Shown piece by piece: positions 1,118 through 20,279 of a stretch of DNA of 64,000 bases. Source of the DNA: Mizuhopecten yessoensis (taxonomy: Eukaryota); assembly GCF_002113885.1 (NCBI RefSeq), contig NW_018406762.1:1142834-1206833 (forward strand). Direction: 5' to 3'. Both the position numbers and the translations under genes were made by a program. Below the pieces are notes generated by a model, which worked only from the letters and a program-made list of their open reading frames with translations, was not told where the DNA came from and ran no database searches. Position 1 is the first letter of the stretch. Every line of letters starts with the position of its first letter.

Positions 1118-4100
1118 AAATTGGAATCAGCCATACAAAATGTTATGGACCATGCTGTTCATGCGAAGAAGTCTTTAGCTCCTGGTCTGCGATGTGTAAG
1201 TGTAAAACCACACTATGAAAACAAGCTTTATTATAAAGTATATGTCAGTTTACCCAGCATGCTCAATATATACCAGAGTTAAAAACAAATTTGAAATCTT
1301 ATTTAAAAGATGCATTGTATAACATATTTTGAGACATCACTTGGAAATAATTCTATCCAATACAAATGAAAAACGAACAATTTCAGCAATGTTTTTTTTT
1401 GCTCAGTTTTACTGTCAAATACAGGCTTTTTCCGCTAGCTTATGAGTGCCTTATTTACCCAAAATGGCCAAAAAATTAGGAATATATTCCCAAATTCAAT
1501 AGAAATATTGCTTTATTTTCCCAATTAATGAAGGAACAGGTCGTTGTAAAATTTAGGTAACAAAAACTTTGAATTTATTAACAATTATGTATGTTAGGAT
1601 GAAATGAATTTGACTGAATGTAGTCCACTGATTTAACACATGAAGACTAACGACACTGTCTGGTTTCTCAGCTCCTCGGCTACTTCCACAAGCAAAGGAA
1701 ACACAGTGGTGTGGACAGCATGTTGCTGAGGCTCTACGGTCCCCTGCTGTGGCGGTCACTCAAGGTCAGTGTCAGTGGTCAGCTACAATGATCAACCTGA
1801 CGTGTTTTAGTGTCACATAACCTTCACACGATGGACATCATTTCTTTATATATGATGGAAAATAGCGAATTCACTTTTAACGCTTGATATTTTTCAAATA
1901 GGTCAAATAAACTTCGTCTTGCAGTAAATGTTGTATGTTAAGTATTGAAGGATTGTTATACTATATACATGTCCTAGGAATAGTTGTATTGTTTCACCAT
2001 TAATAGGTGGCTAACTGTCATGTGAGGGAAAATGCAGCCATGCTTCTTCTAGACTCGTTCCCACTACAAGACCAGGAACTTTGTAACGAAGAACTTGACC
2101 AGCTCTTACAGAAACAGTTTGACATCTTCCAGGTGAGTAGAGGACTAGTTTTTACCTGTAATTATTGGGGGGGGGGGGGNNNNNNNNNNNNNNNNNNNNN
2201 NNNNNNNNNNNNNNNNNNNNNNNNNNNNNNNNNNNNNNNNNNNNNNNNNNNNNNNNNNNNNNNNNNNNNNNGTGGGGGGGGGGGGGGTCCACTTCCAGGT
2301 GAGAAATTGTAATTACTGTCAATAAGTTTAATCAGTTTTGGGGGAGTGACATCAAGCTGGGTACTGATAATGAGCAATTACCTATGATAATCATTTTGAT
2401 GGTGATGGAGATGGGGAGGGGCACATCTTCAAGGTGAGTACAGATACTTTGAAATACTTACCTTACCTGGAAAACCTGTTAATCAGGATAATGAATAACA
2501 TAAAATCCGAAATGTTGACACATTCACTACCTGTGACATAGCATGCCTGAAAGATCATGGCAAGGTCAGCACACAGAATTTGACCATTAATTTAACAAAT
2601 CTGGTCATTTTGGAGGTATTTTAATCCTTTCAGAATTTACTGGAGGATACCTACCCCAGTATTCGCTCGGTCACTGTCCGCAAGCTGTGTAAGATCCTGA
2701 GTACCTTCTGCGAGTTTATCCCGGCGGAAACCATCAAAAATCTCGTCACCAAGATGATGCAGGATCTTGTGTGGGATGCGTCGTCTGCTGACGTCAGAGC
2801 TAGTGTTATATTGGTACGTAAAGACATGTGTGAAGGCCATCTCTCTTCTACATCAAACTCACTTCAAGTAAAGATATACCAAAACAGTTCCTAAAGACAC
2901 TTTAGGCAACTCTTTATATATCCGGTAAACCATTATTATTTACTACATAACAGGAAATGTTCACTCAGTCAAATTTTTCGCCCTTCAACAGTAAAATCCA
3001 TTTTCGCAAAATGTTCAATTTGTCCTCCACATTTAATTTTGATGTGTATTATGTTGTTTAAAAATATTCACTGTAATTATAAATTTGCTCTCATAACAGA
3101 GGGCAAAAAATGACCAAAATTCAACTTCATCAAACATTTCCAGTAAACAGTAGTTTATCTGGGTTTTTTTTTATCCCATCCTTTTGCCTTTCAAATTCTA
3201 TATTGAGTGAGTCTAAGTTAAATATAATCTGTTTTGAAAAGAGGGAAAAGCCATGATAAAATAACTGGAGGCATAATATAAAACAAGTGAAAATTTGCTG
3301 TTCCGAAACGTTGTGGTCAAGACAACTGTGCAAAGATTTGGGCTTACAAACTTAACACATGTACATGTATTATACACTCTGACAATAGAGCGAAAGATTT
3401 TAGTTATCTTTCATGTATCGACCAGTGATGTTATTTCTTTGTACAAAAGTGTATTAATCCTTTCACCACTGTAGACCATAATGGACTTCTCCAGATCAAT
3501 GCATGGTAGGGTTAACTTAAGTTACATAGGGGTGAAAGGGATAATGAGAAATGTTTTGTCACTGAGGCTGGCTGACTGAGGATTATCACTGTTGTAGAGT
3601 ATGATGACACTACTGGACAACCAGATGTTTATTCCCATGCTGAAACCGATCCTGCCCCAGCTTTGTAACCACATACATGACGTGTCGGAGAAGGTCCGGG
3701 TCGCCATGATAGAACTCCTCCTCAAGGTCAAGGGCATCAGAGCCATCAAGGTCAGTCAGCTGTGTAATCTAAGGTCAAGGTCATGTATGTATGGTTAAGT
3801 CTTACTAAACGATACTTCCTAATTGCGATGGCCAGAGGACCAGATTATTCCACCATTGAATAAACCATGGCGTTGGCTCTACCCTAAATAAAAAAAAATC
3901 AATTTTAATTCAGTAATCAAGCAAACACTGGATCAGGATATGTAAGCTTTGCTTCAATCTCTGATGGCTCATTAAGAATTGATAAACGAAACATGCAAGT
4001 CAATCCGCCCGTCTGCTGTGGGACACTCCAGCAACCAGGCTCTTCTTTCTTTCCCCCCAAAATGCTCAACTTGCCATGGGACAGTAATTTCTCTGGCAAA

Positions 4101-7100
4101 GAACTCGGTCATAACCAATTTTTATGCCAGGTGGCACTCGTATCCTTTTAATGCTGACCCACTTTAAAATAAAAGTGTAAATACTTATCGTTAATGGGCA
4201 GGCCTATCACTTACATCTGTGGTTTGTAACAGTGCATGGACATATAACAATGTCTTAATATAAAGATAAATCAGTATTATAAAGTTCAGATTATGTATCA
4301 AATGAAAGATTTTTATCAAATAATGTCCCAATTAACATGTTACAGAAAGAGCTGATAACATTTCGCATCATTTTATCACCAATACTAATTCCTGATGGTG
4401 AAATTTCCAGGCAGTTGTAGCAGAACAAAAAGTATAAAGATGAACTTGCAATAAGTCTTCGGCTGGAGAATGAGAGTATAGTTATGTAAATGTAAACAAA
4501 CATTTTTCCGTACTCTATGATGAAAGCAATTAAATGATTGTGGGTCTGAATCCTTGTTGCGAAAATTGTTCTGTGTATGATCCCTCAAGGTGTAAAAAGA
4601 GATCTCCACTGTAGACCCATTCGATGGTTTGCAAGCCTGAAAATGTCTCTTAAAATTATGTACTTTTGTAGTACTGGGATATTGTCCCAATGGAGCACAT
4701 ACTGGCCCGTCTGGAGATCGACTCTCATCCGGTCGCCCGCCGCATCATGAAGCTGCTACAGAGCACATTCATGCCCCTGGACAAACCTAAGAGTGTCCAG
4801 CTTGACCGCTGTGTTGCCCTGATAGAGTCCAGCCGAGGAGCGGCCAGACAGTACTTCCACTACGCTCCAGCCAACCTGTCAGTGCAGGACACAGGTAAAG
4901 CCAATAACACAGATCTCTTTAAATTAAATTAACACAGATTGTAATTTCACGAATTTTACATGTGAAGGAACATTTTTGTGGTGTCCTAATATATTAATCG
5001 TGGCTCATTTTTACGCTTGTGATATTAGTTGTGGATCTTATTCTTTGTGCTTTCATTATTGACTACAATCGCAAAAAATATTATCCCCGTGGAAATATCC
5101 TGCTATATTGTATGTGGTAACGCCTGTGTAACTTGTGACTAATATCCTGTGGTCTGTCACAGCCACGTTTATGATATATAAACATATACTTACAGCCACG
5201 TTTATGATATATAAACATATATTTACAGCCATGTATATGATATATATACATATATTTACAGCCACGTATATGATATATAAACATATATTTACAGCCACGT
5301 TTATGATATATAAACATATTTACAGCCACGTACATGATATATAAACATATATTTACAGCCACATATATGTTATAAAAACATTTACAGCCACGTATATGAT
5401 ATATATACATATATTTACAGCCACAAATATGATATATCAACATATATTTACAGCCACGTATATTATATATATATATATATATTTACAGCCACGTATATGA
5501 TATATAAACATATATTTACAGCCACGTATATGATATATAAACATATTTACAGCCACATATATGATATATAAACATATTTACAGCCACGTATATGATATAA
5601 ACATATATTTACAGCCACGTATATGATATAAAAACATATATTTACAGCCACGTATATGATATCCATCGTCGCCTGTATCCTGAGATGTATAAAAGCAGAG
5701 AAATCAAAGCAGGATGGAGTTGATACTTCACAACAGGAAGGGGGAGATAACTCCAAGAGCCAGGATGCAGCAGCGGAAGAGGTATGAAATCAAACTGCCA
5801 AAATTCATCATTAAAAAGGAATTAATTTTGAATATCTGTTTTTTTTTATTGTTTTGGTCATAAAGCAGAATGATTTGTGAATTTCAAGGACCCTGTAAAG
5901 GGTCTTGTTCTTATGTATGAAATGGATATTTCATGCTCAGGAAAAGTGAAATATTTAATGATTAAAAAAAAAAGATACATGACATTATGGGCCTGCCCCC
6001 AGAGGAGCTACTGTTTCCATTTATGCAGCATTCAGTTCTCACATCAAAGGGTCCTCCAGGGTCGAAATTTGGATAAAAGCCCTTTACAAATACTGAAGAA
6101 GTAAGATCAAAATTTGCTTTTATTTTCCCATTGGGCCCTGCCTCTCTTCCTCTATGGGTCGACACCTTCCATTTATAATATATTGAGTCTTCTTGGGCTA
6201 AGGATTGTCATGACTAAATGCAGTCAAAATCTGCTCAGCTTTTCTTGTCAAGTAGTATTTTAATGAAAAATTGATGAGTATGCAACACCATGCATAAACT
6301 CACTTGCCTTCAGGCAGAGGAACAGATTGTCCAGAAGATTTTGTTTTTAGTTCATTCACTCTATCAATTTTCTTGTATAATTTAATGATTTGTGTAGAGA
6401 AACTTAATTGTTTGTAATGCGGTGATGTCGTTTAGCTTTTGTGTCTGGATCGTTCAATTTATTTAAACAAAAAATGAATATCAGAATTCTTAGGTTTTTA
6501 GTATATGAGAATGCGGACTGTAACTAGTGATATGACCACAATAAATACAAAAATATGGGATGTGATTAACAAAAAAACGAAACATAAACACCAGTGTTTC
6601 TGTAATATTTCTGAATTCAGCTTGACGAAGAGGAGGAGGAGGAGGAGGAGGAAGATGGCACCCTGACAATACATAATACAGAGGTGATGGCCGGACTGGT
6701 GGAGGCAGTGGTCATACTCTGGTCCGTCACCAATAACGAATTCAAAAAGGTAACTTCTACTTAAAAATTGCAATACTGTATACAGGGAATTGTCGCCCTT
6801 AGATAGTAAAATCCATTTTCCCCCAATATTAAATTTGCCCTTCACATTTAGTACTATGTTTATAATAGTGGTTACAGATGTCCACTGTAATGATAAATTT
6901 TTCTCCCACCCTTCACAGGTGTGTCTCCCATGCTAGCCGGGAAAGATCAGCTTGTCACCCCCTAGGGGGAAATAGCCTCGTGCCGATTAGCAAGCGTTCG
7001 ATTGTGACGTCATTAAAATGTGTCACCGGTAATTGTGACGTCATCGAACGTGAATGACGAAATTCATACAACAAATGTGTTTTTGTTTACACTACTTAGT

Positions 7101-10100
7101 GTCGGTGGAGTTGTGACTGAAATAATATGATGGGAGAAAAACAATTCTCCCCTACCTTGAGGGTGTGATAGAGAAATCTCCAGGGGAGGATTCTATTAGT
7201 CATCATTACGAAGGGCAAAAAAGGCGAAAAATTAAACTGCAGAGAAAATTTCCAAGTATACAGTATGTACATGTGGTAAAGAAAATTTTGTATCCCCTGC
7301 CTATTTGTATTACAATATTACATCTTATTTATGTCCTTAAAGTCTGGGATATCAATGATACTTTACATGTTGTTTTCTTACTAGGGGTTTCCTTAAGGAG
7401 GTGTCACTGAGTTTTTTTTAAAATTGGAGTGTAACCTTACTGGCTTGCTTTGGGTTATACATGTGTACATGATAACATCCACAGAACTTGTAAAATAAAC
7501 ACCGATAAGATTTACATCAGTCTTTAGTAGAGAGGTTTGGTGTAGTTATAACGTTAACATGTATGTCTGTTCCTTCGGCTATCTTTGTATCAGTGGTATC
7601 AAGGGGATAATGAGATTAAATCAGAAATGTTTGTTTATTCCAGCGACAGAACCATGGGATTGAGAAGAACCTACAAACCAAGATCAGCATTGCTGTTACA
7701 GAAATGATGAAGTTCTTTGACGTGAGTATGATAAAGTATCCTAGTCATGTAACTTCTGTGTTTCCCTGAAGGATTGATTTAATTACAGCCATTTCTTGTG
7801 TATTGCCTGCGGGCTTTACTGTTTTTGGCTTGGAAAAATACCGACGACTGGGGGCTATCTGATGAAGCGGGCAAAGTGACCAAACGTTTCCAAGAAACCC
7901 ATAAAAAGTGCAAGCTATGTGATACCTTACAAATGCTAAACCATAAACATCTTGATTATAAACAATAACATTACATAATTATAGAAATTCTCAAGTTTTA
8001 TCATTGAACGTATGCGTGAAAAGTTGGTTCATATTACGGGTACTGTGTTATACCGTCTATGTGGAGTAGTAGGAGTCGCCATGCCTGTTTACATCAGGAT
8101 AGTGAATGGCTCTATTAGTATATCAAGGATTAGAAGTTAAAAAACAGAAAACCCAAGTTAAATGTGTATCTCATTCCTAAGCATCTGGTATTCGTTCTGT
8201 ATATTGGTTTTTATGTAGCAGAATTTATTTCAAAACTTGATATTTTGAGGGGTGCAGGCAACATAAAGGAGTTGGCAATATGTGAGAAATTACAATAAGG
8301 ATTGATACAAACTACTGATATGGAAATCCGTTGCAACAACACAAACTGAAATATGTTGAGTTGTTGATTTGAGACTATTTGTTTTGTAGGACCCTCAAGT
8401 GTGTGCTGCTCTGATAAACCTGGCCGGCTTCGTTCCTTACAACTCTGTTCCCACCATCAGGTATCACTACTACAGATATCTAGTTGTACAATAAGCTTTA
8501 AGACACAGAATAACCCCTTTTCTCTATGACCAGTCATCATGTCCTCTCATATTCTAGCCATTTTCACTTGCAAGGGATGTGGCTTGATAGTAAAAGGTAT
8601 TACTATATTCTGTTACAGATCTTCATGTCTGTATATCTGTTAGAGGCTTACATTATGTGTGTGTCCATTGTCTGTTACAGCCGTATATGTCTGTCCATCA
8701 TCTGTTACAGCTGTACATGTCTGTCCATCATCTGTTACAGTGTAAATATCTGTGTGATATTCGTTACAGCCAAACTTGTCTGTCTATCATCTGTTACTAA
8801 TGTTTGTGTCAGTCCAACAGCTGTCCATGTCTGTCCGGCATCGATAACAGTGTATATGCCTGTGTTTTGTTACAGCCGTATGTGTCTATCCAAACTGAAG
8901 AAGATGCCGGTGGACAGTGTGGCGGAGGATTACAACTGTTACCTGGATGCCCTGTGTAAGTGGGACAAGGTGGTGGATATTCTGGACCTAGTGGACGAGT
9001 GGCTGACCGAGGGTCTACAACAGGGTCACTCACAGACACCTACTGTCAAGGTTTGTTGGGAGGATTTTATAGCTGAGTGAGGCTCCCTCACTGACACTGT
9101 AGGCATGTGTTTGTGAAACAACGTAAAGATACGTCATCATGACAAGTGTCAGAAGGACTATATGTAAAGATACGTCATCATGACAAGTGTCAGAAGGACT
9201 ATATGTAAAGATAAGTCATCATGACAAGTGTCAGAGGGACTTCATGTAAAGATACGTCATCATGACAAGTGTCAGAGGGACTATATGTAAAGATACGTCA
9301 TCATGACAAGTGTCAGAGGGACTTCATGTAAAGATACGTCATCATGACAAGTGTCAGAGGGACTATATGTAAAGATACGTCATCATGACAAGTGTCAGAG
9401 GGACTATATGTAAAGATACGTCATCATGACAAGTGTCAGAGGGACTTCATGTAAAGATACGTCATCATGACAAGTGTCAGAGGGACTATATGTAAAGATA
9501 CGTCATCATGACAAGTGTCAGAGGGACTATATGTAAAGATACGTCATCATGACAAGTGTCAGAGGGACTATATGTAAAGATACGTCATCATGACAAGTGT
9601 CAGAGGGACTATATGTAAAGATACGTCATCATGACAAGTGTCAGAGGGACTATATGTAAAGATACGTCATCATGACAAGTGTCAGAGGGACTATATGTAA
9701 AGATACGTCATCATGACAAGTGTCAGAGGGACTATATGTAAAGATACGTCATCATGACAAGTGTCAGAGGGACTATATGTAAGAAACATCATCATGACAA
9801 GTGTCAGAGGGACTATATGCAAAGATACGTCATCATGACAAGTGTCAGAGGGACTATATGTAAAGATCCGTCATCATGACAAGTGTCAGAGGGACTATAT
9901 GTAAGAAACACCATCATGACAAGTGTCAGAGGGACTATATGCAATGATACGTCATCATGACAAGTGTCAGAGGGACTTCATGTAAAGATACGTCATCATG
10001 ACAAGTGTCAGAGGGACTATATGTAAGAAACACCATCATGACAAGTGTCAGAGGGACTATATGCAAAGATACGTCTTCATGACAAGTGTCAGAGGGACTA

Positions 10101-13100
10101 TATGTAAGAAACACCATCATGACAAGTGTCAGAGGGACTATATGCAAAGATACGTCTTCATGACAAGTGTCAGAGGGACTATATGTAAAGATCCGTCATC
10201 ATGACAAGTGTCAGAGGGACTATATGCAATGATACGTCATCATGACAAGTGTCAGAGGGACTTTATGTAAAGATACGTCATCATGACAAGTGTCAGAGGG
10301 ACTATATGTCAAGATACGTCATCATGACAAGTGTCGGATGGACTATATGTAAAGATACGTCATCATGACATGTGTCAGAGGGACTATATGTAAAGAAGAG
10401 AAATAAGATTCTGATCTATTCAAATAACAGGGCATAGGGAGGCACTCATTACCTAGACCCTAAAATTTTCAAGTAGTTTACAATAGTCTCCTCTTATATT
10501 CATGACTGTGATAGGCAATGTTGTCATCCCTTGTGACCATTGGCAGAGGATATATAAAAAGAATGGATCTGTCTGTCTGTGCAGATGGTATTAAGGCAGA
10601 TTTTTTTGTCCGTATCTGGGTATATGTTAAATATCAATTTACCTTACATATATACAATGCTCAATAAAAGCATGTCGCTGATACAGAAGTGTCAAACTGA
10701 CTCGGATCCAATTGCATTCACAGCCCTATGAATGCAATTCTTCTTGCAGTGTTCAAATAGGGACTTGAAGTTGAAATGTAAATATAGCATCATTAAATTG
10801 TAAATGCTGTTATGTAACTTTCAGAGTTGTATACTATGCTATATTGTAACTTGGGCATCTGGGCATCTTATCCTAACTTTTCCGCTTAGCAGGGGATATC
10901 AATATTGCGCCATCTTCATTTTCACCTCTTCAGAAGTACACTGAGGAGGCATCGATAAAGAAAGCTTATTTAATTTTTAGTACAGATACAACCGTTATAT
11001 GTGAATTACTGAGAACAGTAATAAAACACAAATACAGACCTCTGTATAGAATTAATGTTTCTTCTTTAGGTTGGTAAGACGAATCGGAAGAGTGTTGGGT
11101 TTGTGGTACCACACGAGCCAGCGCCCATACTCGGGATAGACTACCTGACCTACATGTTACGTCACCCGATATGTCGACCCATCCTCACGAGTCACGAAAA
11201 CGAACTCACGCAGCTCCAAACTAAACTCAAGACTGTCATGGTACGTATAATAAAGTATACTGTTTTACTACGAAATGAAAGTCTGGATATACCCAGAAAA
11301 TGATCAATATAAACCTCCCAAGTAATGTACCAAAACAAAAATTGCCAAAATGAGTTATTCGTGAAAGCATGCAAAATTATATGGATGGTTTTATCATGAA
11401 ATGCTTTTATTGCTATGGAAGCGACTTGTGAACAAATTTTGAGTGGTCATATTGAACTAGTGTCTTCGATACACAGTGTATATATGTTCATTGTATCTAT
11501 ACTCATTTGACCAGAGTCACTGAGGGAGGTAAGTGTTATAAACCGTCATCGCTAAGGGAGGTAATTGTTATATACTGTCGTCACTAAGGGAGGTAATTAT
11601 TGTAAACCATTGTCGCTAAGGGAGGTAATTGTTATAAACTGTCGTAACTTAGGGAGGTAAAATGTTATAAATGAGTCGTCGCTAAGGGAGGTAAAATGTT
11701 ATAAAAGAGTTGTCATCAAGGGAGGTAATTGTTGTAAACCGTCATCGTTAAGGGAGGTAAAATGTAATAAATGAGTTGTCGCTAAGGGAGATTAAACATT
11801 ATAAACTGTACACAATCATTGCTAAAGAATGTTTTACTTTGTCAACAGAAGTGTGTTGAGAAGAACCTGAGATCCGACACCGAACCCGTAAATGACGACC
11901 TGTTAACTGCCAGCTTTGGTCTCTACTGTAAACTCGCGGGCATTCTCCATCAGTCAGTAAGTCTGTACTCCACACACTACCAGCTTTAGTCTCTACTGTA
12001 AACTCGCGGGTATTCTCCATCAGTCAGTAAGTCAGTACTGTACACACTGCCAGCTTTGGTCTCTACTGTAAACTCGCGGGCATTCTCCATCAGTCATTAA
12101 GTCTGTACTCTACACACTACCAGCTTTGGTCTCTACTGTAAACTCGCGGGCATTCTCCATCAGTCAGTAAGTCTGTACTCTACACACTACCAGCTTTAGT
12201 CTCTACTGTTAACTTGCGGGCATTCTCCAATAGTCAGTAAGCCTGTATTCTACATACAGGCTACTGACCTTAACTTTTTATTCTAAAATATAGGCATTGG
12301 TATGTTTACATCAGACTAGACCAACAGGAACAGATCTTAATGTTAGGATGGATGGTTTTAATCGAAATACATTGTCAGAGAGGATTTGAAGTGCTTAACA
12401 ATGCTGATCAGTGTCTTTGTCTGAGAGGATTTGACTTAACAATGCTGATCAGTGTCTTTGTCTGAGAGGATTTGACTTAACAATGCTGATCAGTGTCTTT
12501 GAAAGTTTGATTTGTTCTTGGAACACAAATGCTTTATTGAGAATGAATGCAGGTCATAAAAAGTTGGAAGTTCTAAGTTTGATTAAGGTTTGAAGAACAA
12601 ATGTTACGGTCACATGTACGGGATCAAATAAAGTGTCTTCATTAAAATGTCAGTGTTTAGGATTTTACAAGGCTACTTGAGTAAATAAGCGGTCTTCTCT
12701 GTGTAAATAAAACAAAACAGTTATATCTTAACTTCCCAGTTAACATGTGCATTTAGACACTGAGAGGGTCATGACAGTAGAATCTGTTGAGCATTTAGGC
12801 ACTGAGAGGGTCATGACAGTAGAATCTGTTGAGCATTTAGGCACTGAGAGGGTCATGACAGTAGAATCTGTTGAGCATTTAGGCACTGAGAGGGTCATGA
12901 CAGTAGAATCTGTTGAGCATTTAGGCACTGAGAGGGTCATGACAGTAGAATCTGTTGAGCATTTAGGCACTGAGAGGGTCATGACAGTAGAATCTGTTGA
13001 GCATTTAGGCACTGAGAGGGTCATGACAGTAGAATCTGTTGAGCATTTAGGCACTGAGAGGGTCATGACAGTAGAATCTGTTGAGCATTTAGGCACTGAG

Positions 13101-16100
13101 AGGGTCATGACAGTAGAATCTGTTGAGCATTTAGGCACTGAGAGGGTCATGACAGTAGAATCTGTTGAGCATTTAGGCACTGAGAGGGTCATGACAGTAG
13201 AATCTGTTGTAGCCCACCTATAATTATACAGTTTATATAGTGCGTTATCCACTGTGCCACCCCCGACCACACTAATAGGGCTACTCCAGTCACACCATCC
13301 TAAAATGGCTCACGTTAAGAGATAATGATTAATTTAGATGGGAACATCCGTCCTTGTACTAGGTGCTAGACTATCTTTTTGTTTAGCTTTAAAATATGAA
13401 CCTTAATTTGTTCTTTTTTCTCTCCATACAGAATACAAAAAACGATGCGACTTCAACATTTGAGGAGTTATATTCTTGGGCAGATGTACATGTGTTACCC
13501 AGCATTAGCCAGCTGGACAAACGGGCAGACATGACGTCCAGGAAACGTACATTGTTTACCTTGACGGATATAACTATCCTTCCCAGCCCTGATACGCAGG
13601 ACAAACAGACAGACTTGTCCAGGAAGCGAACATCACAACAGGCTGGACAGAATTCCGGAACATTGGCAACATCCATTGTCGAGATGATTCTGGCTGCCTG
13701 GGGTGACCTCCTCCTCATAGGCATAGGAGATACAAGCTTTGCTGTCCTGTTGGCCGACTTCTGTGTTAGTTGTCTACAGAGAGGTAACGTAGACTTCCCC
13801 AACCGCCAATAGTTGCTTATAAGTCAATTTTTTGTAATTATTTCTTTGTCTGTAATGATCGTTTTACTTTTGTTAAGATATGTTTTATGTATAAATTATA
13901 TAGTGGCATGTTTTACTTCAGTTCCAAACTTTGGAGTCTTGACATTACAAAAAGTATGGTAACATTGTACATCCATTTTTTATGCCATCAAAATTCATTT
14001 ATAAGGTCTTGACTTGCAAAATGCTCCCAACAAGTTACTAACTTGATCGGTGTAACCAATACCTTACCTGTTTGCACAGTCCTGTCAACGAAAGGAAAAC
14101 TAGAGTGGTTTAACATAAGAATATATATTTCCCTGGAGGTTTCGTGTCATATTCTTTGTTAACTTTTGTACGAGATGCAATAACGAAGAACTAAATTTTC
14201 TGTTTTACAGACGAGTGTCTGTCCACCTTGTCCGCTGTCATGAACTGTTTGTGTAGTGTCACAGCTCATATCCTACTGCAAGGCAAGAGGTCTGATGGTG
14301 ACAGCATCGCAGCCTACCTCGGTAAAGTGTTCATAGCCATAGCGACCGCCCTGCTGAAGGACAAAGATCAGGTCTCTAAGGTCTGTGGTTGTTTCTCTTC
14401 CTTGCTTATATTGGTTTCCAACACGTAGGGCCTGTTCATTTATGCAGAACACCGGTACTTCCGTTTTTTAAAGGTAGCATTTTTGGTTATAAATCCTGGG
14501 GGACCTGCAAAAGTTGATGCAGGCCTTGCGAGGCTTTGTCAAGACTCGCCTGAAAGCAGCATCAGATTACTGGGTCCAACCTTATTTCATAAATTAACGA
14601 CTCTGGTCCAACCAATTCAACCATTTGGATCGCGATAAACGAAAACGACCTACATCTCCAAATGGTTTATTATTTTGATCAAGGTTGGTATGAAATGAGG
14701 TTCATTTAATGTTAGTGAAGGAGGAGGGTTACCTGTTTATTCACAAAATGTCACACATATTTTTCATTATTTTAGGAAAATATATTTCAGACATGAGCAT
14801 TCGTTCAATCGCAGCATACTTTCTTCTGAAGTTCAATGCACCAAGAAAATGTCCTCAATACATAAAACACATACAATACAATAGACCATGTGTGTGCTTG
14901 TATTATTAAACCTCTCCCATCAATGTACCGGTAACATTTGTGGAATGAGGGTACCCACATTTAATTTTGTATGTATTTGAAGATTTGCTGACGAATGAAT
15001 AAAAACAACTATTTAACCTCTATATCTACTTAAACATGTTAAACTCTTGGTCAGAATGTTCCGATGAACTTACTGCGAAGGTGACTTGAAATAGTGTTTT
15101 AATCTGTTAAATGTTTAATCTGTTTAATGTAATGTTTAATCTGTTAAATGTTTAATCTGTTAATCTGTTAAATGTTTAATCTGTTAAATGTAATGTTTAA
15201 TCTGTTAAATGTTTAATCTGTTAAATGCTGATTTCATGTGTTGGCAAGCGAGGTTGATAGATTGGTGGATTTGATGGATTGAAATTATCATCTGGCAAAT
15301 CATAAAACATGAAAAAAGCAAAAATACAAAAAATAAAAATCTTGATCAAACCCTATTTGATCATGTATTCGTATCGGTGATTGATAGAAATTGTTACATA
15401 GTGCATAGATGAATGAAGAGTCTGCAATGAATTTCGATAACATCAGAGTTGTCGTTTTAAATTTAAATCTATTCTCCTATTCGGTTTGACAGTTATTACC
15501 AGGGGTGCGGAATCATTTGATGGAAATCTTCACACTTGTTTACGGAAGTCCGTTGATGGATGAAACTACACTACAGGAAATCATGGCCACAGTTATTGGG
15601 GCCTTGTTGGGGGAACTGGTCCACACAAGTCAGCAGGTAAATATTGGGGCCTTGTTGGGGGAACTGGTCCACACAAGTCAGCAGGTAAATATTGGGGCCT
15701 TGTTGGGGGAACTGGTCCACACAAGTCAGCAGGTAGATATTGGGGCCTTGTTGGGGGAACTTGTCTGCACAAGTCAGCAGGTAAAAATTGGGGGGCCCTA
15801 AAGGGAAATGATCCACACAAGTCTGCAGTTTTATCTGAAATCTTGTACAGTTTCTGTACTGTAGAGCAATATGTGTATACAGGAATATCATGACACTCCT
15901 AAAATAAATATGATTTATTCTTGATAATTTTATGGAAAAATAACATCAATATATTTTAATCTACAGCAAAAAACCATATTTATCAAAAGTTAAAGTCAAT
16001 GTAAATAATGTGTTCTGTCATGAGAATCTATCATACTATACCATACTTAACTGCCACTTCAATTTCAGTTTGATTTGGAAGAAATCAGTGGTGATCTTAC

Positions 16101-19100
16101 ACAGTTACCTCCCTTGTCTCGCTGGCTGTGTGATTCAGTATGCAGGAAAAACTACATAGCAAAGTATGTACTAGATTTGACTGTCATTGTCAAGGTCTGA
16201 TGTTTACAACCTGACCCCGTAGTTTGTTTATAAAACATTTGGGCTTCATCAGTGAAGTTGAGTCAGCTTTGACATACTAATATTCCTTGTTTAATTCTCA
16301 CCAAAGCCATTACTTTGTTAGTGAAATTAAATTATTTACAGAAAATAAAAATATTTTAGTGTCTATATTAAAAATAATACATAGACATGAATGATGATAA
16401 TATTCTGTAAATTTGTAACAGTTCTGATGGAGTTAGTGAGGACTCTTGGTACTACGGGGAATAAAAAACAGACAGAGGTGTCAGACTTTTCCCTTCTTTT
16501 GAAAATATTAACTTTTGAGGATCACTGTGTTGTGTTTACAGGCACTTCATTGGGGAGTTAGGCAAGTGTTTGGAGTCGGGGGCTGTGGATGACCTACACA
16601 CCCTTCACGGTGCCATCCACATGTTGGGGTCCATTGCCAAATGTAAGTGTATGGATTATGCCTTGGCTGCACACACGGATAGGATTTTTGTTAGACATTG
16701 TTGGTTTAGTCTAGATAGTAAAAAAAAAAAAAAATATCTTGAGTGGTTTTATAAAGTTCCAGTGAAATCATGTATTAGTGGACAGTTTTGTTCCACCTAT
16801 TATGCAAATCCTTAAATATCGTATTTTAGAAAGACAGTGTAGATATTAATGATAATTTTAGATATAATTTTTCTATACTTTCCTCGACTGCAATGATATT
16901 TTTCTGTTTATTGAAATAAATAATTTTAGGGAAGAGGGGATGATATTCAATACTTGTGACAACATAGCTCAAGTCCTAAAAGGGGAGACACAAATATCTA
17001 GTGTACCTAAATAAATTACTGAGCTAAACCGAAATGAAATGCTGTCAAAAATAACAGTTTTGATGTTTCTTCTCGTCAGGCAATTGATGAGAACCTTTCA
17101 GTGCTTCATTTGTGAATTTCCGAAAATATGTTTTTAAGATAAACCCAAGATACCGGGAATGAAGGAGTGTTGGATCGCAGTCCAGAGTCAGGCTGATAAA
17201 ATCAAAAGTGAACAACACACGCAGGAGGAGGAGGAGGAGGATGTGAGAGACAAGTAAGTACATGTATCAGTTATTACAGATATTGTGAAATATTTGTGTA
17301 TTTGTTTGGAAAGGGGAAGGAAGACGGGGGGTGAGGGAGAGATAGCTCAGAATTGCAGCAACATTAGTTAGAGTGAAAAGTTATATACATGCCTCCATCG
17401 TTAGGGCATAGGTGACTTAGGGCATAGGTGACTTAGGGCATAAGTGACTTAGGGCATAGGTGACTTAGGGGTTAGGTGACTTAGGGCATAGGAGACTTAG
17501 AGCATAGGTGACTTAGGGCTTAGGCGACTTAGGGCATAGGTGACTTAGGGGTTAGGTGACTTAGGGCATAGGTGACTTTGGAATTAGGTGACTTAGGGCA
17601 TAGGTGACTCAGGGGTTAGGGGACTCAGGGCATAGGAGACTTAGAGCATAGGTGACTTAGGGCATAGGTGAATTAGGGCTTAGGTGACTAAGGACATAGG
17701 TGACTAAGGGCTTAGGTGCCTTAGGGCATAGGTGACTTAGGGCAAAAGTGACTTAGGGCATAGGTGACTTTGGGATTAGGTGACTTAGGGCGTAGGTGAC
17801 TTAGGGCATAGGTGACTTTGGGCTTAGGGGACTTAGGGCATAGGTGCCTTAGGGCTTAGGTGACTAAGGGCTTAGATGACTTAGGGCATAGGAGACTTGG
17901 GACATAGGTGACTTAGGGCATAGGTGACCACGGGCTTGGGTAACTTAGGGCATAGGTGACTTAGGGCGTAGGTGACTTAGGGCATAGGTGACTCTGGGGA
18001 TCGGTGACTCAGGGCATAGGTGACTTAGAGCATAGGTGACTTAGGGATTAGGTGACTTAGGGCATAGGTGACTTTAGGCTTAGGTGACTTAGGGCATAGT
18101 TGACTTAGGGCTTAGGTGACTTAGGGCATAGGTCACTTAGGGCATAGGTGACTAAGGGCTTGGGTAACTTAGGGCATAGGTGACTTAGGGCCTAGGTGAC
18201 TTAGGGCATAAGTGACTTAGGGCATAGGTGACTTTGGGCTTAGGTGACTTAGGGCATAGGTTACTTAGGGCTTAGGTGACTTAGGGCTTAGGTGACGTAG
18301 GGCATAGGTGACTTAGGGCATAGGTTACTTAGGGCTTAGGTGACTTAGGGCTTAGGTGACGTAGGGCATAGGTGACTTAGGGCATAGGTTACTTAGGGCT
18401 TAGGTGACTTAGGGCTTAGGTGACGTAGGGCATAGGTGACTTAGGGCATAGGGGACTTTGGGATTAGGTGACTTAGGGAATAGGTGACTTAGGGCAAAAG
18501 TGACTTAGGGCATAGGTGACTTCGGGATTAGGTGACTTAGGGCATAGGGGACTTAGGGCTTAGGTGACTTTGGGCATAGGTGACTTAGGGCATAGGGGAC
18601 TTAGGGCTTAGGTGACTTTGGGCATAGGTGACTTAGGGCATAGGTTACTTAGGGCTTAGGTGACTTAGGGCATAAGCGACTTAGGGCATAGGTGACTTTG
18701 GGCTTAGGTGACTTAGGGCATAGGTGACTCAGGGGTTAGGTGACTCAGGGCATAGGTGACTTAGAGCATAGGTGACTTAGGGCTTAGGTGACTTAGGGCA
18801 TAGGTGACTTAGGGCATAGGTGACTTAGGGCATAGTTGACTTAGGGCTTAGGTGACTTAGGGCTTAGATGACTTAGGGCATAGGTGACTTGGGACATAGG
18901 TGACTTAGGGCATAGGTGAATTAGGGCTTAGGTGACTAAGGACATAGGTGACTAAGGGCTTAGGTGACTTAATATGTTACAATGTTGACAATGTAAGCCC
19001 CCTATAGTAAGTGAACATACCCAATATATTAACCAGGTGTTCATTACAATGACAATCTTTAACATCTTTTATGGACGAAAGCGATCGATGAAGCAGTTTC

Positions 19101-19586
19101 ACTAAACGTGCTGTTTTCATTAATTACACCACAGAAAGAAGTGATCAAAAATCAAAAAACTATTGTGTCGTCATTTCTTATGTTTTTAGGAAAAATAAAA
19201 ATATGTTTCATGCTAGAATGTGTCATGAAAATGGTGTGAACCTGTCAAATATTGCAATGTTTCTTTTCCCCATCAACATGTTGGTGTTTGGGGTAAAGAG
19301 CTGTATATGTGTGGGGTGTAGGATGATGGCTTAGGGAATGTAGAACTCACCCAAAATTAGTTTAAACAAAGATTCAGTCTAGCTTCAGTTTGAACATTTT
19401 CTATTTCACGAAAAAAGAAATAAAGAAACCATCAGAAAGTTACATTTCTCATTACTAACTCTGATAATAGTTATAAAATCAATACAGTTGTTCTCATGTG
19501 TTGTACATTTGTTTTCCAGAGAATTATTGCAGTCTCTGACAACAAAACTACAAGAATGTCAGCAGGCGCTGGGACTGGCATCCTAA
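1118..19586 (+). CDS. NCAPG2: Condensin II complex subunit G2 (HEAT-repeat protein), 5'-partial. 20 exons: 1118-1195, 1672-1764, 2007-2132, 2634-2813, 3598-3750, 4672-4894, 5648-5781, 6621-6749, 7644-7721, 8390-8460, 8876-9050, 11070-11240, 11849-11956, 13432-13783, 14211-14380, 15493-15636, 16069-16163, 16542-16642, 17139-17253, 19520-19586 (stop TAA 19584-19586)
   Basis: All exons are AG/GT flanked, phases are consistent, and they join to 2763 nt (920 aa + stop). Peptides recall vertebrate CAP-G2 in colinear order: LLGYFHKQRK..LLRLYGPLLWRSLK, VRENAAMLLLDSFP, LLEDTYPSIR, DASSADVR, HDVSEKVRVA, YWDIVPMEHILARLEIDSHPVARR, MAGLVEAVVILW, YLDALCKW, FGLYCKL. C-terminal exon boundaries (e.g. donor 14371 vs 14380) are less certain. 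Confidence 0.93.
2180..2271. other. Assembly gap (N run) flanked by poly-G
   Basis: N run inside NCAPG2 intron 2133-2633. Confidence 0.99.
3454..3544 (+). mobile_element. ~90-bp TTAA-flanked MITE, copy 1 of 3
   Basis: TTAA-(T/C)CCTTTCACC ... GGTGAAAGGG-(A/T)TAA. Near-identical to 50131-50221 and, inverted, to 42847-42937. Confidence 0.8.
5157..5662 (+). repeat. ~33-bp tandem repeat (~15 copies) containing the 3' splice site and first ~15 nt of NCAPG2 exon 5648-5781
   Basis: Unit ACAG|CCACGTATATGATATATAAACATATATTT. The last copy runs directly into the coding exon. Confidence 0.95.
6774..7265. mobile_element. TA-flanked MITE (TACTGTATA...TATACAGTA) with a nested TIR element at 6887-7209
   Basis: Outer inverted ends with TTTCGCCC/GGGCGAAA-like subterminal motifs. 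Inner element bounded by GTAATGAT...ATCATTAC and carrying two TGACGTCA sites. Confidence 0.55.
8609..8892 (+). repeat. Degenerate ~30-bp tandem repeat containing the acceptor of NCAPG2 exon 8876-9050
   Basis: Recurrent TCTGTTACAG|CCGTATATGTCTGTCCATCA at 8671, 8701, 8731 and further copies. The real junction is TGTTACAG|CCGTATGTGTCTATCCA. Confidence 0.8.
9122..10397 (+). repeat. 41-bp minisatellite, ~31 copies, intronic
   Basis: Unit ATGTAAAGATACGTCATCATGACAAGTGTCAGAGGGACTAT; period 41 (e.g. 9251 to 9292). Confidence 0.97.
11515..11810 (+). repeat. Degenerate ~31-bp tandem repeat, ~9 copies
   Basis: Unit GTCGCTAAGGGAGGTAATTGTTATAAAC(T). Confidence 0.85.
11907..12258 (+). repeat. 70-bp tandem repeat x5 spanning the 3' 50 nt and donor of NCAPG2 exon 11849-11956
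   Basis: Unit CTGCCAGCTTTGGTCTCTACTGTAAACTCGCGGGCATTCTCCATCAGTCA|GTAAGTCTGTACTCCACACA. Confidence 0.95.
12373..12500 (+). repeat. ~41-bp tandem repeat x3
   Basis: GTCTGAGAGGATTTGACTTAACAATGCTGATCAGTGTCTTT repeated. Confidence 0.9.
12749..13209 (+). repeat. Near-perfect 42-bp minisatellite x11, intronic
   Basis: Unit GCATTTAGGCACTGAGAGGGTCATGACAGTAGAATCTGTTGA; explains the repetitive ORFs on both strands. Confidence 0.97.
15098..15227 (+). repeat. ~16-bp AT-rich tandem repeat
   Basis: TTAATCTGTTAAATGT repeated ~8 times. Confidence 0.9.
15594..15798 (+). repeat. 48-bp in-frame tandem repeat x4 spanning the 3' end and donor of NCAPG2 exon 15493-15636
   Basis: ATTGGGGCCTTGTTGGGGGAACTGGTCCACACAAGTCAGCAG|GTAAAT; GT at 15637, 15685, 15733, 15781. 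Confidence 0.95.
17401..18971 (+). repeat. 16-bp TTAGGG-containing minisatellite, ~98 copies, in last NCAPG2 intron
   Basis: Unit TTAGGGC(A/T)TAGGTGAC. Confidence 0.97.
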
Positions 19587-20045
19587 ACCAAACCTACAGA
19601 CAGTCTACAAATGCCAGGCCTGGCAACGTAACAGATATACAGGCAAGAAACGCTGCTACCAACAAAACAAAACTACAAGAATGTCAGCAGGCGCTGGGAC
19701 TGGCATCTTAAACAAAACCTATTGACAGTCTACAAATGCCAGGCCTGGCAACGTAACAGATATACAGGCAAGAAACGCTGCTACCAACTAAACAAAACTA
19801 CAAGAATGTCGGCAGGCGCTGGGACTGGCATCTTAAACCAAACCTATTGACAGTCTACAAATGCCAGGCCTGGCAACGTAACAGATATACAGGCAAGAAA
19901 CGCTGCTACCAACAAAACAAAACTACAAGAATGTCGGCAGGCGCTGGGACTGGCATCTTAAACCAAACCTACAGACAGTCTACAAATGCCAGGCCTGGCA
20001 ACGTAACAGATATACAGGCAAGAAACGCAGCGACCAACAATAACT
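19541..20045 (+). repeat. 125-bp tandem repeat x4 spanning the last codons, stop codon and proximal 3' UTR of NCAPG2
   Basis: Copies start at 19541, 19666, 19791, 19916 (AACAAAACTACAAGAATGTC...). Confidence 0.95.
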
Positions 20046-20279
20046 AAAGCATACTTCAGTCAGCAAATGCTGGGATTTGCATCGAAGACAACACTTTCAC
20101 TTCACTGAGACAAGAATTACAGATGTGTCAAAATGTTAGGTGAATACAGTGAACCACATGGTCAACAATTTAACCGTGATTTATTATGAGCATGTGTAGT
20201 TAAGTAAAATTTATAATAACTTTAAGGTAGTTTCTATATCATATTCAAGAATGATTGCAGACAGAAGCACTGCAAAATT

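What the first reader, a model, noticed from the sequence alone, without database searches (positions are those of the whole stretch)
5135..5665. Apparent acceptor hand-off: the best-looking 3' splice site is now poisoned and only the last repeat copy gives an intact ORF
Seen: the first copy has a branch-like GACTAAT and unique upstream tract (ATCCTGTGGTCTGTCACAG, AG 5161-5162). Splicing there reads (ATYMIYKHIFT)n and hits TAA at 5342-5344 after a 31-bp unit. The penultimate AG (5613-5614) gives an immediate in-frame TAA. Only AG 5646-5647, preceded by the weak repeat-derived AAACATATATTTACAG, gives the conserved ATYMISIVACILRC. Inference: the functional acceptor moved ~485 nt downstream onto a repeat-made site. 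The spliceosome must skip ~14 near-identical decoys, perhaps through exon definition, and array length could tune NMD of an essential gene.
Basis: partly seen in the sequence, partly recalled or inferred. Interest (0 to 1): 0.78.

Follow-up and report, generated by a model that had tools for sequence, protein, structure and literature searches.

The report
Decoy splice-acceptor minisatellite in scallop NCAPG2
One intron of a scallop chromosome-condensation gene ends in sixteen tandem copies of its own cut-here signal, and the RNA reads laid here use only the last copy; this kind of repeat is already known from amphioxus and a few human genes.

Summary
Window 5159-5662 is a 33-bp minisatellite (15.6 copies). 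Each unit carries ACAG plus the first 15 nt of an exon of NCAPG2 (condensin-2 subunit G2; the species, Mizuhopecten yessoensis, is named by an NCBI protein). Of the 21 AGs in the intron, only AG 5646-5647 gives an open frame.

RNA evidence agrees. All 22 junction reads in two raw RNA runs, and one 4,004-nt transcript contig, join 4894 to 5648. RNA depth is zero across the array.

The used acceptor has the poorest pyrimidine tract of the 14 acceptors I could place in the gene. The first copy looks ordinary.

This is a known kind: tandem copies of an intron-exon boundary. Amphioxus "mirages" include acceptor-side cases (PMC3087553). The human F7 intron 7 repeat is the donor-side mirror (PMC1557585). 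Earlier notes of this scan report the same kind at other loci of this genome.

The "hand-off" from an older acceptor, CTGTCACAG, fits the array's sharp left edge and pyrimidine content. I put it at about 0.55-0.6.

Nothing supports NMD tuning by array length.

The parts
4672..4894 (+). Upstream NCAPG2 exon (YWDIVPMEH...SVQDT). It ends in phase 1, and the donor GT is at 4895-4896.
   Evidence: matches PDB 9f5w_G, condensin-2 subunit G2, residues 495-560, E 8.2e-17; junction placed against P0153. RNA depth and the joint.
4895..5647 (+). Intron of 753 nt, GT..AG.
   Evidence: the joint 4890->5644 (cut +4 = 4894->5648) skips 753 nt with GT..AG ends.
4921..5115 (.). Fragment of a dispersed repeat (transposon-like) inside the intron. 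It ends 43-45 nt before the array.
   Evidence: 42 matches in the own genome, one of them the locus itself, the other 41 at 73-84% identity; in 16 aligned copies the similarity stops at about 5113-5115 and the flanks then differ.
5137..5143 (+). Branch-point-like GACTAAT. Its A lies 21 nt before the first copy's exon-like start.
   Evidence: Weak evidence: the strict motif occurs at 1 of 13 real acceptors and at 8% of background AGs.
5144..5162 (+). Unique pyrimidine-richer tract ATCCTGTGGTCTGTCACAG with the first acceptor-like AG (5161-5162). It is silent in the RNA laid.
   Evidence: pyrimidine fraction 0.60; zero RNA depth; a stop at 5342-5344 if this AG were used.
5159..5662 (+). 33-bp minisatellite of 15 full units plus a last 19-nt part. 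Each unit is ACAG + 15 nt of exon head + a 14-nt AT-rich tail. The last copy is the real intron-exon junction.
   Evidence: no other locus of the genome carries this unit.
5646..5647 (+). The AG that is actually used as the 3' splice site.
   Evidence: 13 reads (X23), 9 reads (X24) and 1 contig (X19); the only open frame.
5648..5781 (+). Downstream exon (A)TYMISIVACILRCIKAEKSK...AAAEE. The donor GT is at 5782-5783. The unique part is GC 0.49, purine 0.65.
   Evidence: The exon head is kept in Pecten maximus, Ylistrum balloti and P0001.

Best explanation
This is a 'mirage'-type minisatellite. The 3' end of an NCAPG2 intron (ACAG) and the first 15 nt of the next exon, plus a 14-nt AT-rich tail, have been copied head to tail 15 extra times into the intron.

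Shown: the exon head is ancestral coding sequence. The array is real. Only the exon-proximal (last) AG is spliced in the RNA laid. All other AGs of the intron would give premature stops.

Inferred: the spliceosome picks the last copy because it alone is followed by true exon sequence (GC 0.49, purine-rich GAR motifs, a donor 134 nt away). Each decoy is followed by GC 0.18-0.36 repeat that looks like intron. NMD is only a back-up.

Inferred, about 0.55-0.6: the founding event copied only the 19-nt junction, with an AT-rich filler. That stranded the older pyrimidine tract and branch site in front of the first copy, so the working acceptor is now a repeat-made, unusually weak one.
For: - Array and its statistics.
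- Gene identity.
- The exon head (A/V)TY(M/I)IS is kept in three other scallop proteins.
- 22 of 22 junction reads and 1 RNA contig join 4894 to 5648. RNA depth is zero in every bin from 4908 to 5611. No other joint was listed at min_share 1.
- Only 1 of 21 intron AGs gives an open frame.
- Composition contrast: exon GC 0.49 and 9 GAR triplets, against array GC 0.24 and 0 GAR triplets after the first 12 copies.
- Weak used acceptor and ordinary first copy.
- Sharp left edge: the unit's tail plus ACAG (a 21-mer, 3 or fewer mismatches) occurs nowhere else in the window, and the unit occurs nowhere else in the genome.
- The kind is described in print, acceptor side included, with a donor-side mirror in human F7.
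Against: - Both raw RNA runs come from one study. Their tissue is unknown and NMD was not blocked.
- Joints are listed only from 3 reads up. With 22 reads the 95% upper bound on decoy use is about 13%.
- The exon-context mechanism rests on composition only. No splicing assay was done, and no enhancer matrix exists for molluscs.
- The hand-off step has no orthologue evidence. A plain mirage with a truncated first unit gives the same picture.
- The acceptor score rests on only 13 reference sites, scored in-sample.
Confidence: 0.8

Rival explanations
1. A plain mirage with no hand-off. The ancestral acceptor tract was already ...ATAAACATATATTTACAG. The whole 33-nt segment (18 nt of intron tail plus 15 nt of exon head) was duplicated. 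A later deletion at the array's left edge removed the first unit's tail, so the unique tract before the first AG is ordinary intron that looks like an acceptor by chance.
For: - Described mirages copy intron tail plus exon head as one unit.
- The second acceptor-side array of this gene (about 8600-8875) does so.
- A pyrimidine fraction of 0.6 or more is found at 20% of background AGs, and a strict CTRAY at 8%. The flank's looks are therefore not rare.
Against: - It needs an extra deletion.
- The supposed ancestral tract would have a pyrimidine fraction of 0.40-0.45, below all 13 other acceptors of the gene.
- Only 2.3% of background AGs have both the strict branch motif and a pyrimidine fraction of 0.6 or more.
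Confidence: 0.33
2. The decoys are used at an appreciable rate and their transcripts are removed by NMD. Array length or unit make-up would then set the productive output of NCAPG2.
For: - Every decoy leads to a premature stop.
- Several decoys score as well as or better than the used site.
- Steady-state RNA under-reports NMD targets.
Against: - 0 of 22 junction reads use a decoy, and RNA depth is zero across the array in two raw runs. One assembled transcript carries only the 4894->5648 join.
- Equal use of 16 sites would need NMD more than 99% efficient to fit these counts.
Confidence: 0.07
3. The array is mis-sized or partly an assembly artefact of a short-read genome, so the count of decoys and their frames is unreliable.
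For: No contig of the DNA run laid spans the whole array. One contig carries an extra AT after 5249.
Against: - 14 DNA-like runs from 6 studies hold 0.82 or more of the sampled words. The array is 39% of the stretch.
- Independent contigs match variant units in order, for example 5303-5421 and 5517-5624.
- The splice result does not depend on copy number.
Confidence: 0.05

Closest known systems
[quoted passage not shown]
   Same: Tandem units that copy a splice junction with a piece of the exon. The acceptor side is included: BflGb6 copies the 3' end of the intron plus the 5' part of exon 2. Regular splicing is not disturbed. (Passages read in PMC3087553, and PMC3902484.)
   Different: - The phylum differs (mollusc), and the unit is short: 33 nt against 150-160 nt in BflGb6.
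- The first copy here has a different upstream tract from all the others.
- The used acceptor is the weakest of the gene.
- I did not read the original Adh3 paper.
Human F7 intron 7 37-bp VNTR, and the CBS, LMNB2, PDGF and 6-16 junction minisatellites
   Same: A minisatellite whose terminal unit spans an exon-intron boundary, so identical pseudo-sites follow the real one and stay silent. Only the exon-proximal site is used. (PMC1557585: abstract, Introduction passages and whole Discussion read.)
   Different: These are all donor-side. The selection there was explained by 5'->3' scanning that takes the first site. Here, on the acceptor side, the last of 16 sites in transcription order is taken, so a first-come rule cannot explain it.
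Scanning model of 3' splice-site choice (first AG after the branch point). The duplicated-acceptor globin experiments are named in PMC1557585's Discussion. The model itself is recalled from general knowledge.
   Same: Within one unit the rule may still hold. The only yUnAy motif at a usable distance from the used AG is the TTTAC of the previous copy, at -37.
   Different: A branch site upstream of the array, followed by the first AG, would select 5161-5162, which is not used. The rule does not explain why unit 16 rather than units 2-15 is engaged.
NAGNAG / tandem acceptors (recalled, no call)
   Same: Several AGs compete for one exon.
   Different: The spacing is 3 nt in NAGNAG, which gives in-frame isoforms. 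Here the spacing is 29-35 nt, there are 15 decoys, and all of them are poisoned by stops.

Membership tests
Mirage-type splice-junction minisatellite | Head-to-tail tandem array | tested here: met
   TRF: period 33, 15.6 copies, 89% matches. 16 copies of the 19-mer against 0 in shuffles.
Mirage-type splice-junction minisatellite | The unit contains a splice signal plus the adjoining exon edge, and one terminal copy is the authentic junction | tested here: met
   The unit is ACAG + CCACGTATATGATAT (the first 15 nt of the exon) + tail. The last copy runs into the exon. The exon head is conserved in orthologous proteins.
Mirage-type splice-junction minisatellite | Regular splicing is kept; the copies are not used | tested here: met
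   22 of 22 reads and 1 contig use 5646-5647. RNA depth is zero in the array.
Mirage-type splice-junction minisatellite | Length instability or polymorphism between alleles | tested here: inconclusive
   One DNA contig carries an AT insertion after 5249. No read or contig spans the array, so copy number could not be compared.
NCAPG2 (condensin-2 complex subunit G2) | Sequence similarity to the solved human protein, and a full-length orthologue model | tested here: met
   The exon 4675-4893 matches 9f5w_G residues 495-560, E 8.2e-17. P0153, named condensin-2 complex subunit G2-like by NCBI, lies on the window exon by exon: 14 of 18 junctions were placed exactly. Pfam gave nothing for the single exons.
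F7-type donor pseudo-site VNTR | The repeated site is a 5' splice site and the first copy is used | tested here: not met
   Here the repeated site is a 3' splice site and the last copy is used. It works like the mirror image but is not a member.
Regulated unproductive splicing (alternative splicing coupled to NMD) | Detectable use of the poison site | tested here: not met
   No decoy joint was listed and depth is zero across the array in two raw RNA runs. NMD was not blocked, so low-level use is not excluded.

The most novel reading that the evidence does not exclude
The working acceptor of an essential condensin gene really has moved about 485 nt onto a repeat-made site that is the weakest in the gene, and 15 equal or better decoys are ignored. 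This would make the locus a natural test bed showing that exon-side context can wholly override tract strength and first-come order in 3' splice-site choice. Array length or unit variants would then segregate as alleles that change productive NCAPG2 output.
Probability: 0.12. Interest if true: 0.6.

Novelty: new member of a known kind. Interest (0 to 1): 0.3.

Why it matters
The result mainly sets the record straight. The striking ladder of acceptors is a tolerated junction minisatellite of a described type, not a regulatory switch shown to act.

Its modest value is as a clean natural experiment on 3' splice-site choice. Sixteen near-identical acceptors sit in a row, and the last and weakest is used in all reads laid. 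This is the mirror of the human F7 donor case, where the first site wins.

If orthologues confirm that the old pyrimidine tract was left behind, the locus would document how a splice site can be replaced by its own tandem copy without changing the protein.

The same gene carries further junction arrays, and the scan's earlier notes report many more in this genome. The open question is why such arrays are so common in scallops.

Tried and rejected
- RNA structure hiding the decoys. The fold of 5120-5720 is no more stable than shuffles (z 0.51; 14 of 20 shuffles fold at least as well). Rejected.
- The array as a dispersed or transposon-borne satellite. The own-genome search found the unit only at this locus. 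The one other hit, on contig C4870 at 71-75% identity, is a different 31-nt array. Rejected.
- The exon head recruited from an intronic repeat (exonisation). Rejected, because the head encodes residues kept in three other scallop proteins.
- A nearby template for the 14-nt tail. There are 11 matches of the tail plus ACAG in the window, and all lie in the array.
- Haplotigs or paralogues of the locus. The downstream flank is single-copy. The upstream flank matches only dispersed-repeat copies.
The metagenome scan gave 470 pattern matches but no relative. Searches for short ORF fragments covering the exon or the left flank plus the first units found nothing.
- Single-exon searches. Pfam on single exons gave nothing significant. 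The PDB search with the 44-aa exon gave nothing better than E 2.3.
- Literature. Eight answered searches found the F7 paper and two mirage papers. I found no paper on such arrays in molluscs among the rows these searches listed. Supplementary files (for example the BflGb6 alignments) were not opened.
- The spliced model was never joined for a search. Exons were searched apart.

Full report
**What is there.** Window 5159-5662 is a tandem array with period 33, 15.6 copies, 89% matches and 4% indels. Splitting on the unit's first letters gives 16 starts. Fifteen are full units: nine of 33 nt, four of 31, one of 29 and one of 35. The sixteenth runs into unique sequence. The 19-mer made of ACAG plus 15 further letters occurs 16 times with at most 2 mismatches, against 0 in 100 shuffles.

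**The gene.** It is NCAPG2.
- The exon 4672-4894 matches human condensin-2 subunit G2 (PDB 9f5w_G, residues 495-560, E 8.2e-17).
- A library search with that exon found 185 proteins at E 0.001 or better.
- A follow-up search named the closest full-length ones as condensin-2 complex subunit G2-like of Pecten maximus, Ylistrum balloti and Mizuhopecten yessoensis.
- The M. yessoensis protein P0153 reads ...APANLSVQDTATYMISIVACILRC..., which is exactly what the window gives when 4894 is joined to 5648.
- That protein name, and the earlier notes of the scan, are the only basis for the species name.

From donor 4894 (phase 1) I read every one of the 21 AGs between 4897 and 5647.
- AG 5161-5162 stops at TAA 5342-5344.
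- AG 5613-5614 stops at TAA 5629-5631 after five codons.
- Only AG 5646-5647 stays open to the exon end at 5781.
- GACTAAT is at 5137-5143.
- Two small corrections: the first unit encodes ATFMIYKHILT, and there are 15 upstream acceptor-like AGs.

**Is the array real?**
- Fourteen DNA-like runs from six studies hold 0.82-0.87 of the sampled words of 4600-5900. The array makes up 39% of that stretch.
- Contigs of one independent DNA run lie on array pieces in the right order, one of them with an extra AT after 5249.
- No contig spans the array, so the copy number is not verified.

**Which acceptor is used?** I laid two raw RNA runs, one RNA contig run and one DNA run on 4600-5900 at min_share 1.
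- One splice joint was listed: 4890->5644, cut +4, GT..AG, which is 4894->5648.
- It had 13 reads in X23, 9 reads in X24, and one 4,004-nt contig of depth 22 in X19.
- RNA depth is 0 in every bin from 4908 to 5611 in both raw runs.
- Loose ends at 4670 and 5781 carry the neighbouring exons' sequence.
- Limits: both raw runs belong to one study, joints need 3 reads to be listed, and NMD was not blocked.
- With 0 decoy reads of 22, the upper 95% bound on decoy use is about 13%. Sixteen equally used sites with 90% efficient NMD would have given about 60% decoy reads. The decoys are therefore truly skipped, not merely degraded.

**The exon head is old.** Pecten maximus has VTYMISIVACILRC, Ylistrum balloti has ATYMISIVACILRC and P0001 (a Logan transcript) has VTYIISIIACILRC. 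A more distant mollusc-like protein, P0003, has VAYISML. The 15 exon letters in each unit are therefore copies of real coding sequence. The exon was not recruited from a repeat.

**Strength of the sites.** I placed 14 of 18 junctions of P0153 exactly. I then compared the tested sites with the 13 other acceptors.
- Pyrimidine fraction at -23..-4 is 0.50-0.70 in the 13 reference acceptors, 0.40 at the used site, 0.60 at the first copy and 0.45-0.55 in the 14 repeat decoys.
- A small in-sample weight matrix gives 5.9-13.8 bits for the 13, 0.6 for the used site and 5.0 for the first copy. Two decoys reach 5.3 and 4.7.
- A strict CTRAY at -45..-12 is found at 1 of 13 real acceptors and at 8.3% of 3,759 background AGs, so GACTAAT says little.
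- A pyrimidine fraction of 0.6 or more is found at 11 of 13 real acceptors, against 20% of background AGs.
- The only yUnAy motif at a usable distance from the used AG is the TTTAC of the preceding copy, at -37. Each copy may thus supply the branch site for the next one. This does not explain why the last copy wins.

**Why the last copy (inference).**
- Up to +15 all copies are alike. After that the real exon has GC 0.49, purine 0.65 and 9 GAR triplets, with a donor 134 nt away.
- The decoys are followed by repeat of GC 0.18-0.22 (0.36 at the penultimate copy), with no GAR triplets after the first 12 copies.
- I therefore favour recognition through exon-side context and cross-exon contact with the donor, with NMD as a back-up.
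- RNA structure is not the reason (z 0.51).
- First-come scanning cannot be the reason either, since the last site in transcription order is taken.

**The surroundings.**
- Window 4921-5115 of the intron is a fragment of a dispersed repeat. There are 42 matches in the own genome: the locus itself plus 41 other copies at 73-84% identity.
- In 16 aligned copies the similarity ends at 5113-5115 and the flanks then differ.
- Only 43-45 nt of locus-specific sequence therefore precede the array.
- The unit itself occurs nowhere else in the genome.
- The tail plus ACAG occurs nowhere else in the window.

**Hand-off or not.** The array's left edge is sharp. Unique sequence abuts ACAG, and nothing like the 14-nt tail stands before the first copy.
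- Reading 1: the 19-nt junction was copied with an AT-rich filler, which stranded the older tract.
- Reading 2: a full 33-nt unit was copied, as in described mirages and as in this gene's second acceptor array (about 8600-8875), and the first unit later lost its tail.
I put it at 0.55-0.6.
- The test needs orthologous introns, which I could not reach.

**What is known.**
- PMC1557585 (abstract, Introduction passages and Discussion read) describes the F7 intron 7 VNTR. It lists CBS, LMNB2, PDGF and 6-16 as genes with donor-side junction minisatellites in which mostly only the authentic site is used.
- PMC3087553 (passages) describes amphioxus "mirages", with an acceptor-side case in BflGb6, and states that they do not disturb regular splicing.
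- PMC3902484 (one passage) adds PGBD5, Adh and TnC.
- The lead to the word "mirages" came from earlier notes of this scan. Those notes also report the same kind at POMGNT1, an NHE gene, a beta-secretase gene and others in this genome. I checked the papers but not those loci.

**Verdict.** Use of the last acceptor is shown. The kind is known. The hand-off is plausible but open. NMD tuning is unsupported.

Noticed in passing
window 8600-8875: A second, more degenerate acceptor-side array of the same gene. Units of about 30 nt carry TGTTACAG plus a copy of the head of the exon that starts at 8876. The NCBI model uses the last copy.
   Followed up: partly
window 11906-12254 and 15594-15828: Donor-side junction arrays: 70 nt x 5.0 copies and 48 nt x 4.2 copies. 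Each unit holds an exon end plus GTAAG/GTAAA. tblastn finds the exon end repeated at 11976, 12046 and 12110. The placed donor 15636 lies in the first copy.
   Followed up: partly
window 19541-20048: A 125-nt unit in 4.1 copies that includes the end of the last coding exon of NCAPG2, so the C-terminal coding piece is repeated downstream.
   Followed up: no
window 9123-10396, 12749-13209, 17401-18971: Large intronic minisatellites of the same gene (41 nt x 31, 42 nt x 11, 32 nt x 49) that begin or end within about 10-150 nt of an exon. I did not settle whether their units copy a junction.
   Followed up: no
window 4921-5115; loci L012-L029: A dispersed repeat with at least 40 other copies in the genome. 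In L020 its 3' block is itself tandemly repeated with a period of about 124 nt. Contigs of DNA run X2 break at 5027, 5075 and 5107, inside it.
   Followed up: partly
L006 (G000:C4870), locus 15-1684 and 1787-3104: Two long minisatellites side by side (31 nt x 53 and 34 nt x 39). The first unit contains ACAGGTATGA on the minus strand, which looks like a splice donor.
   Followed up: no
window 4860 and 5774: Two exon positions differ from the window in RNA run X24: C>A in 5 of 12 reads and C>T in 4 of 12 reads. They look like heterozygous SNPs. No DNA of the same animal was laid.
   Followed up: no
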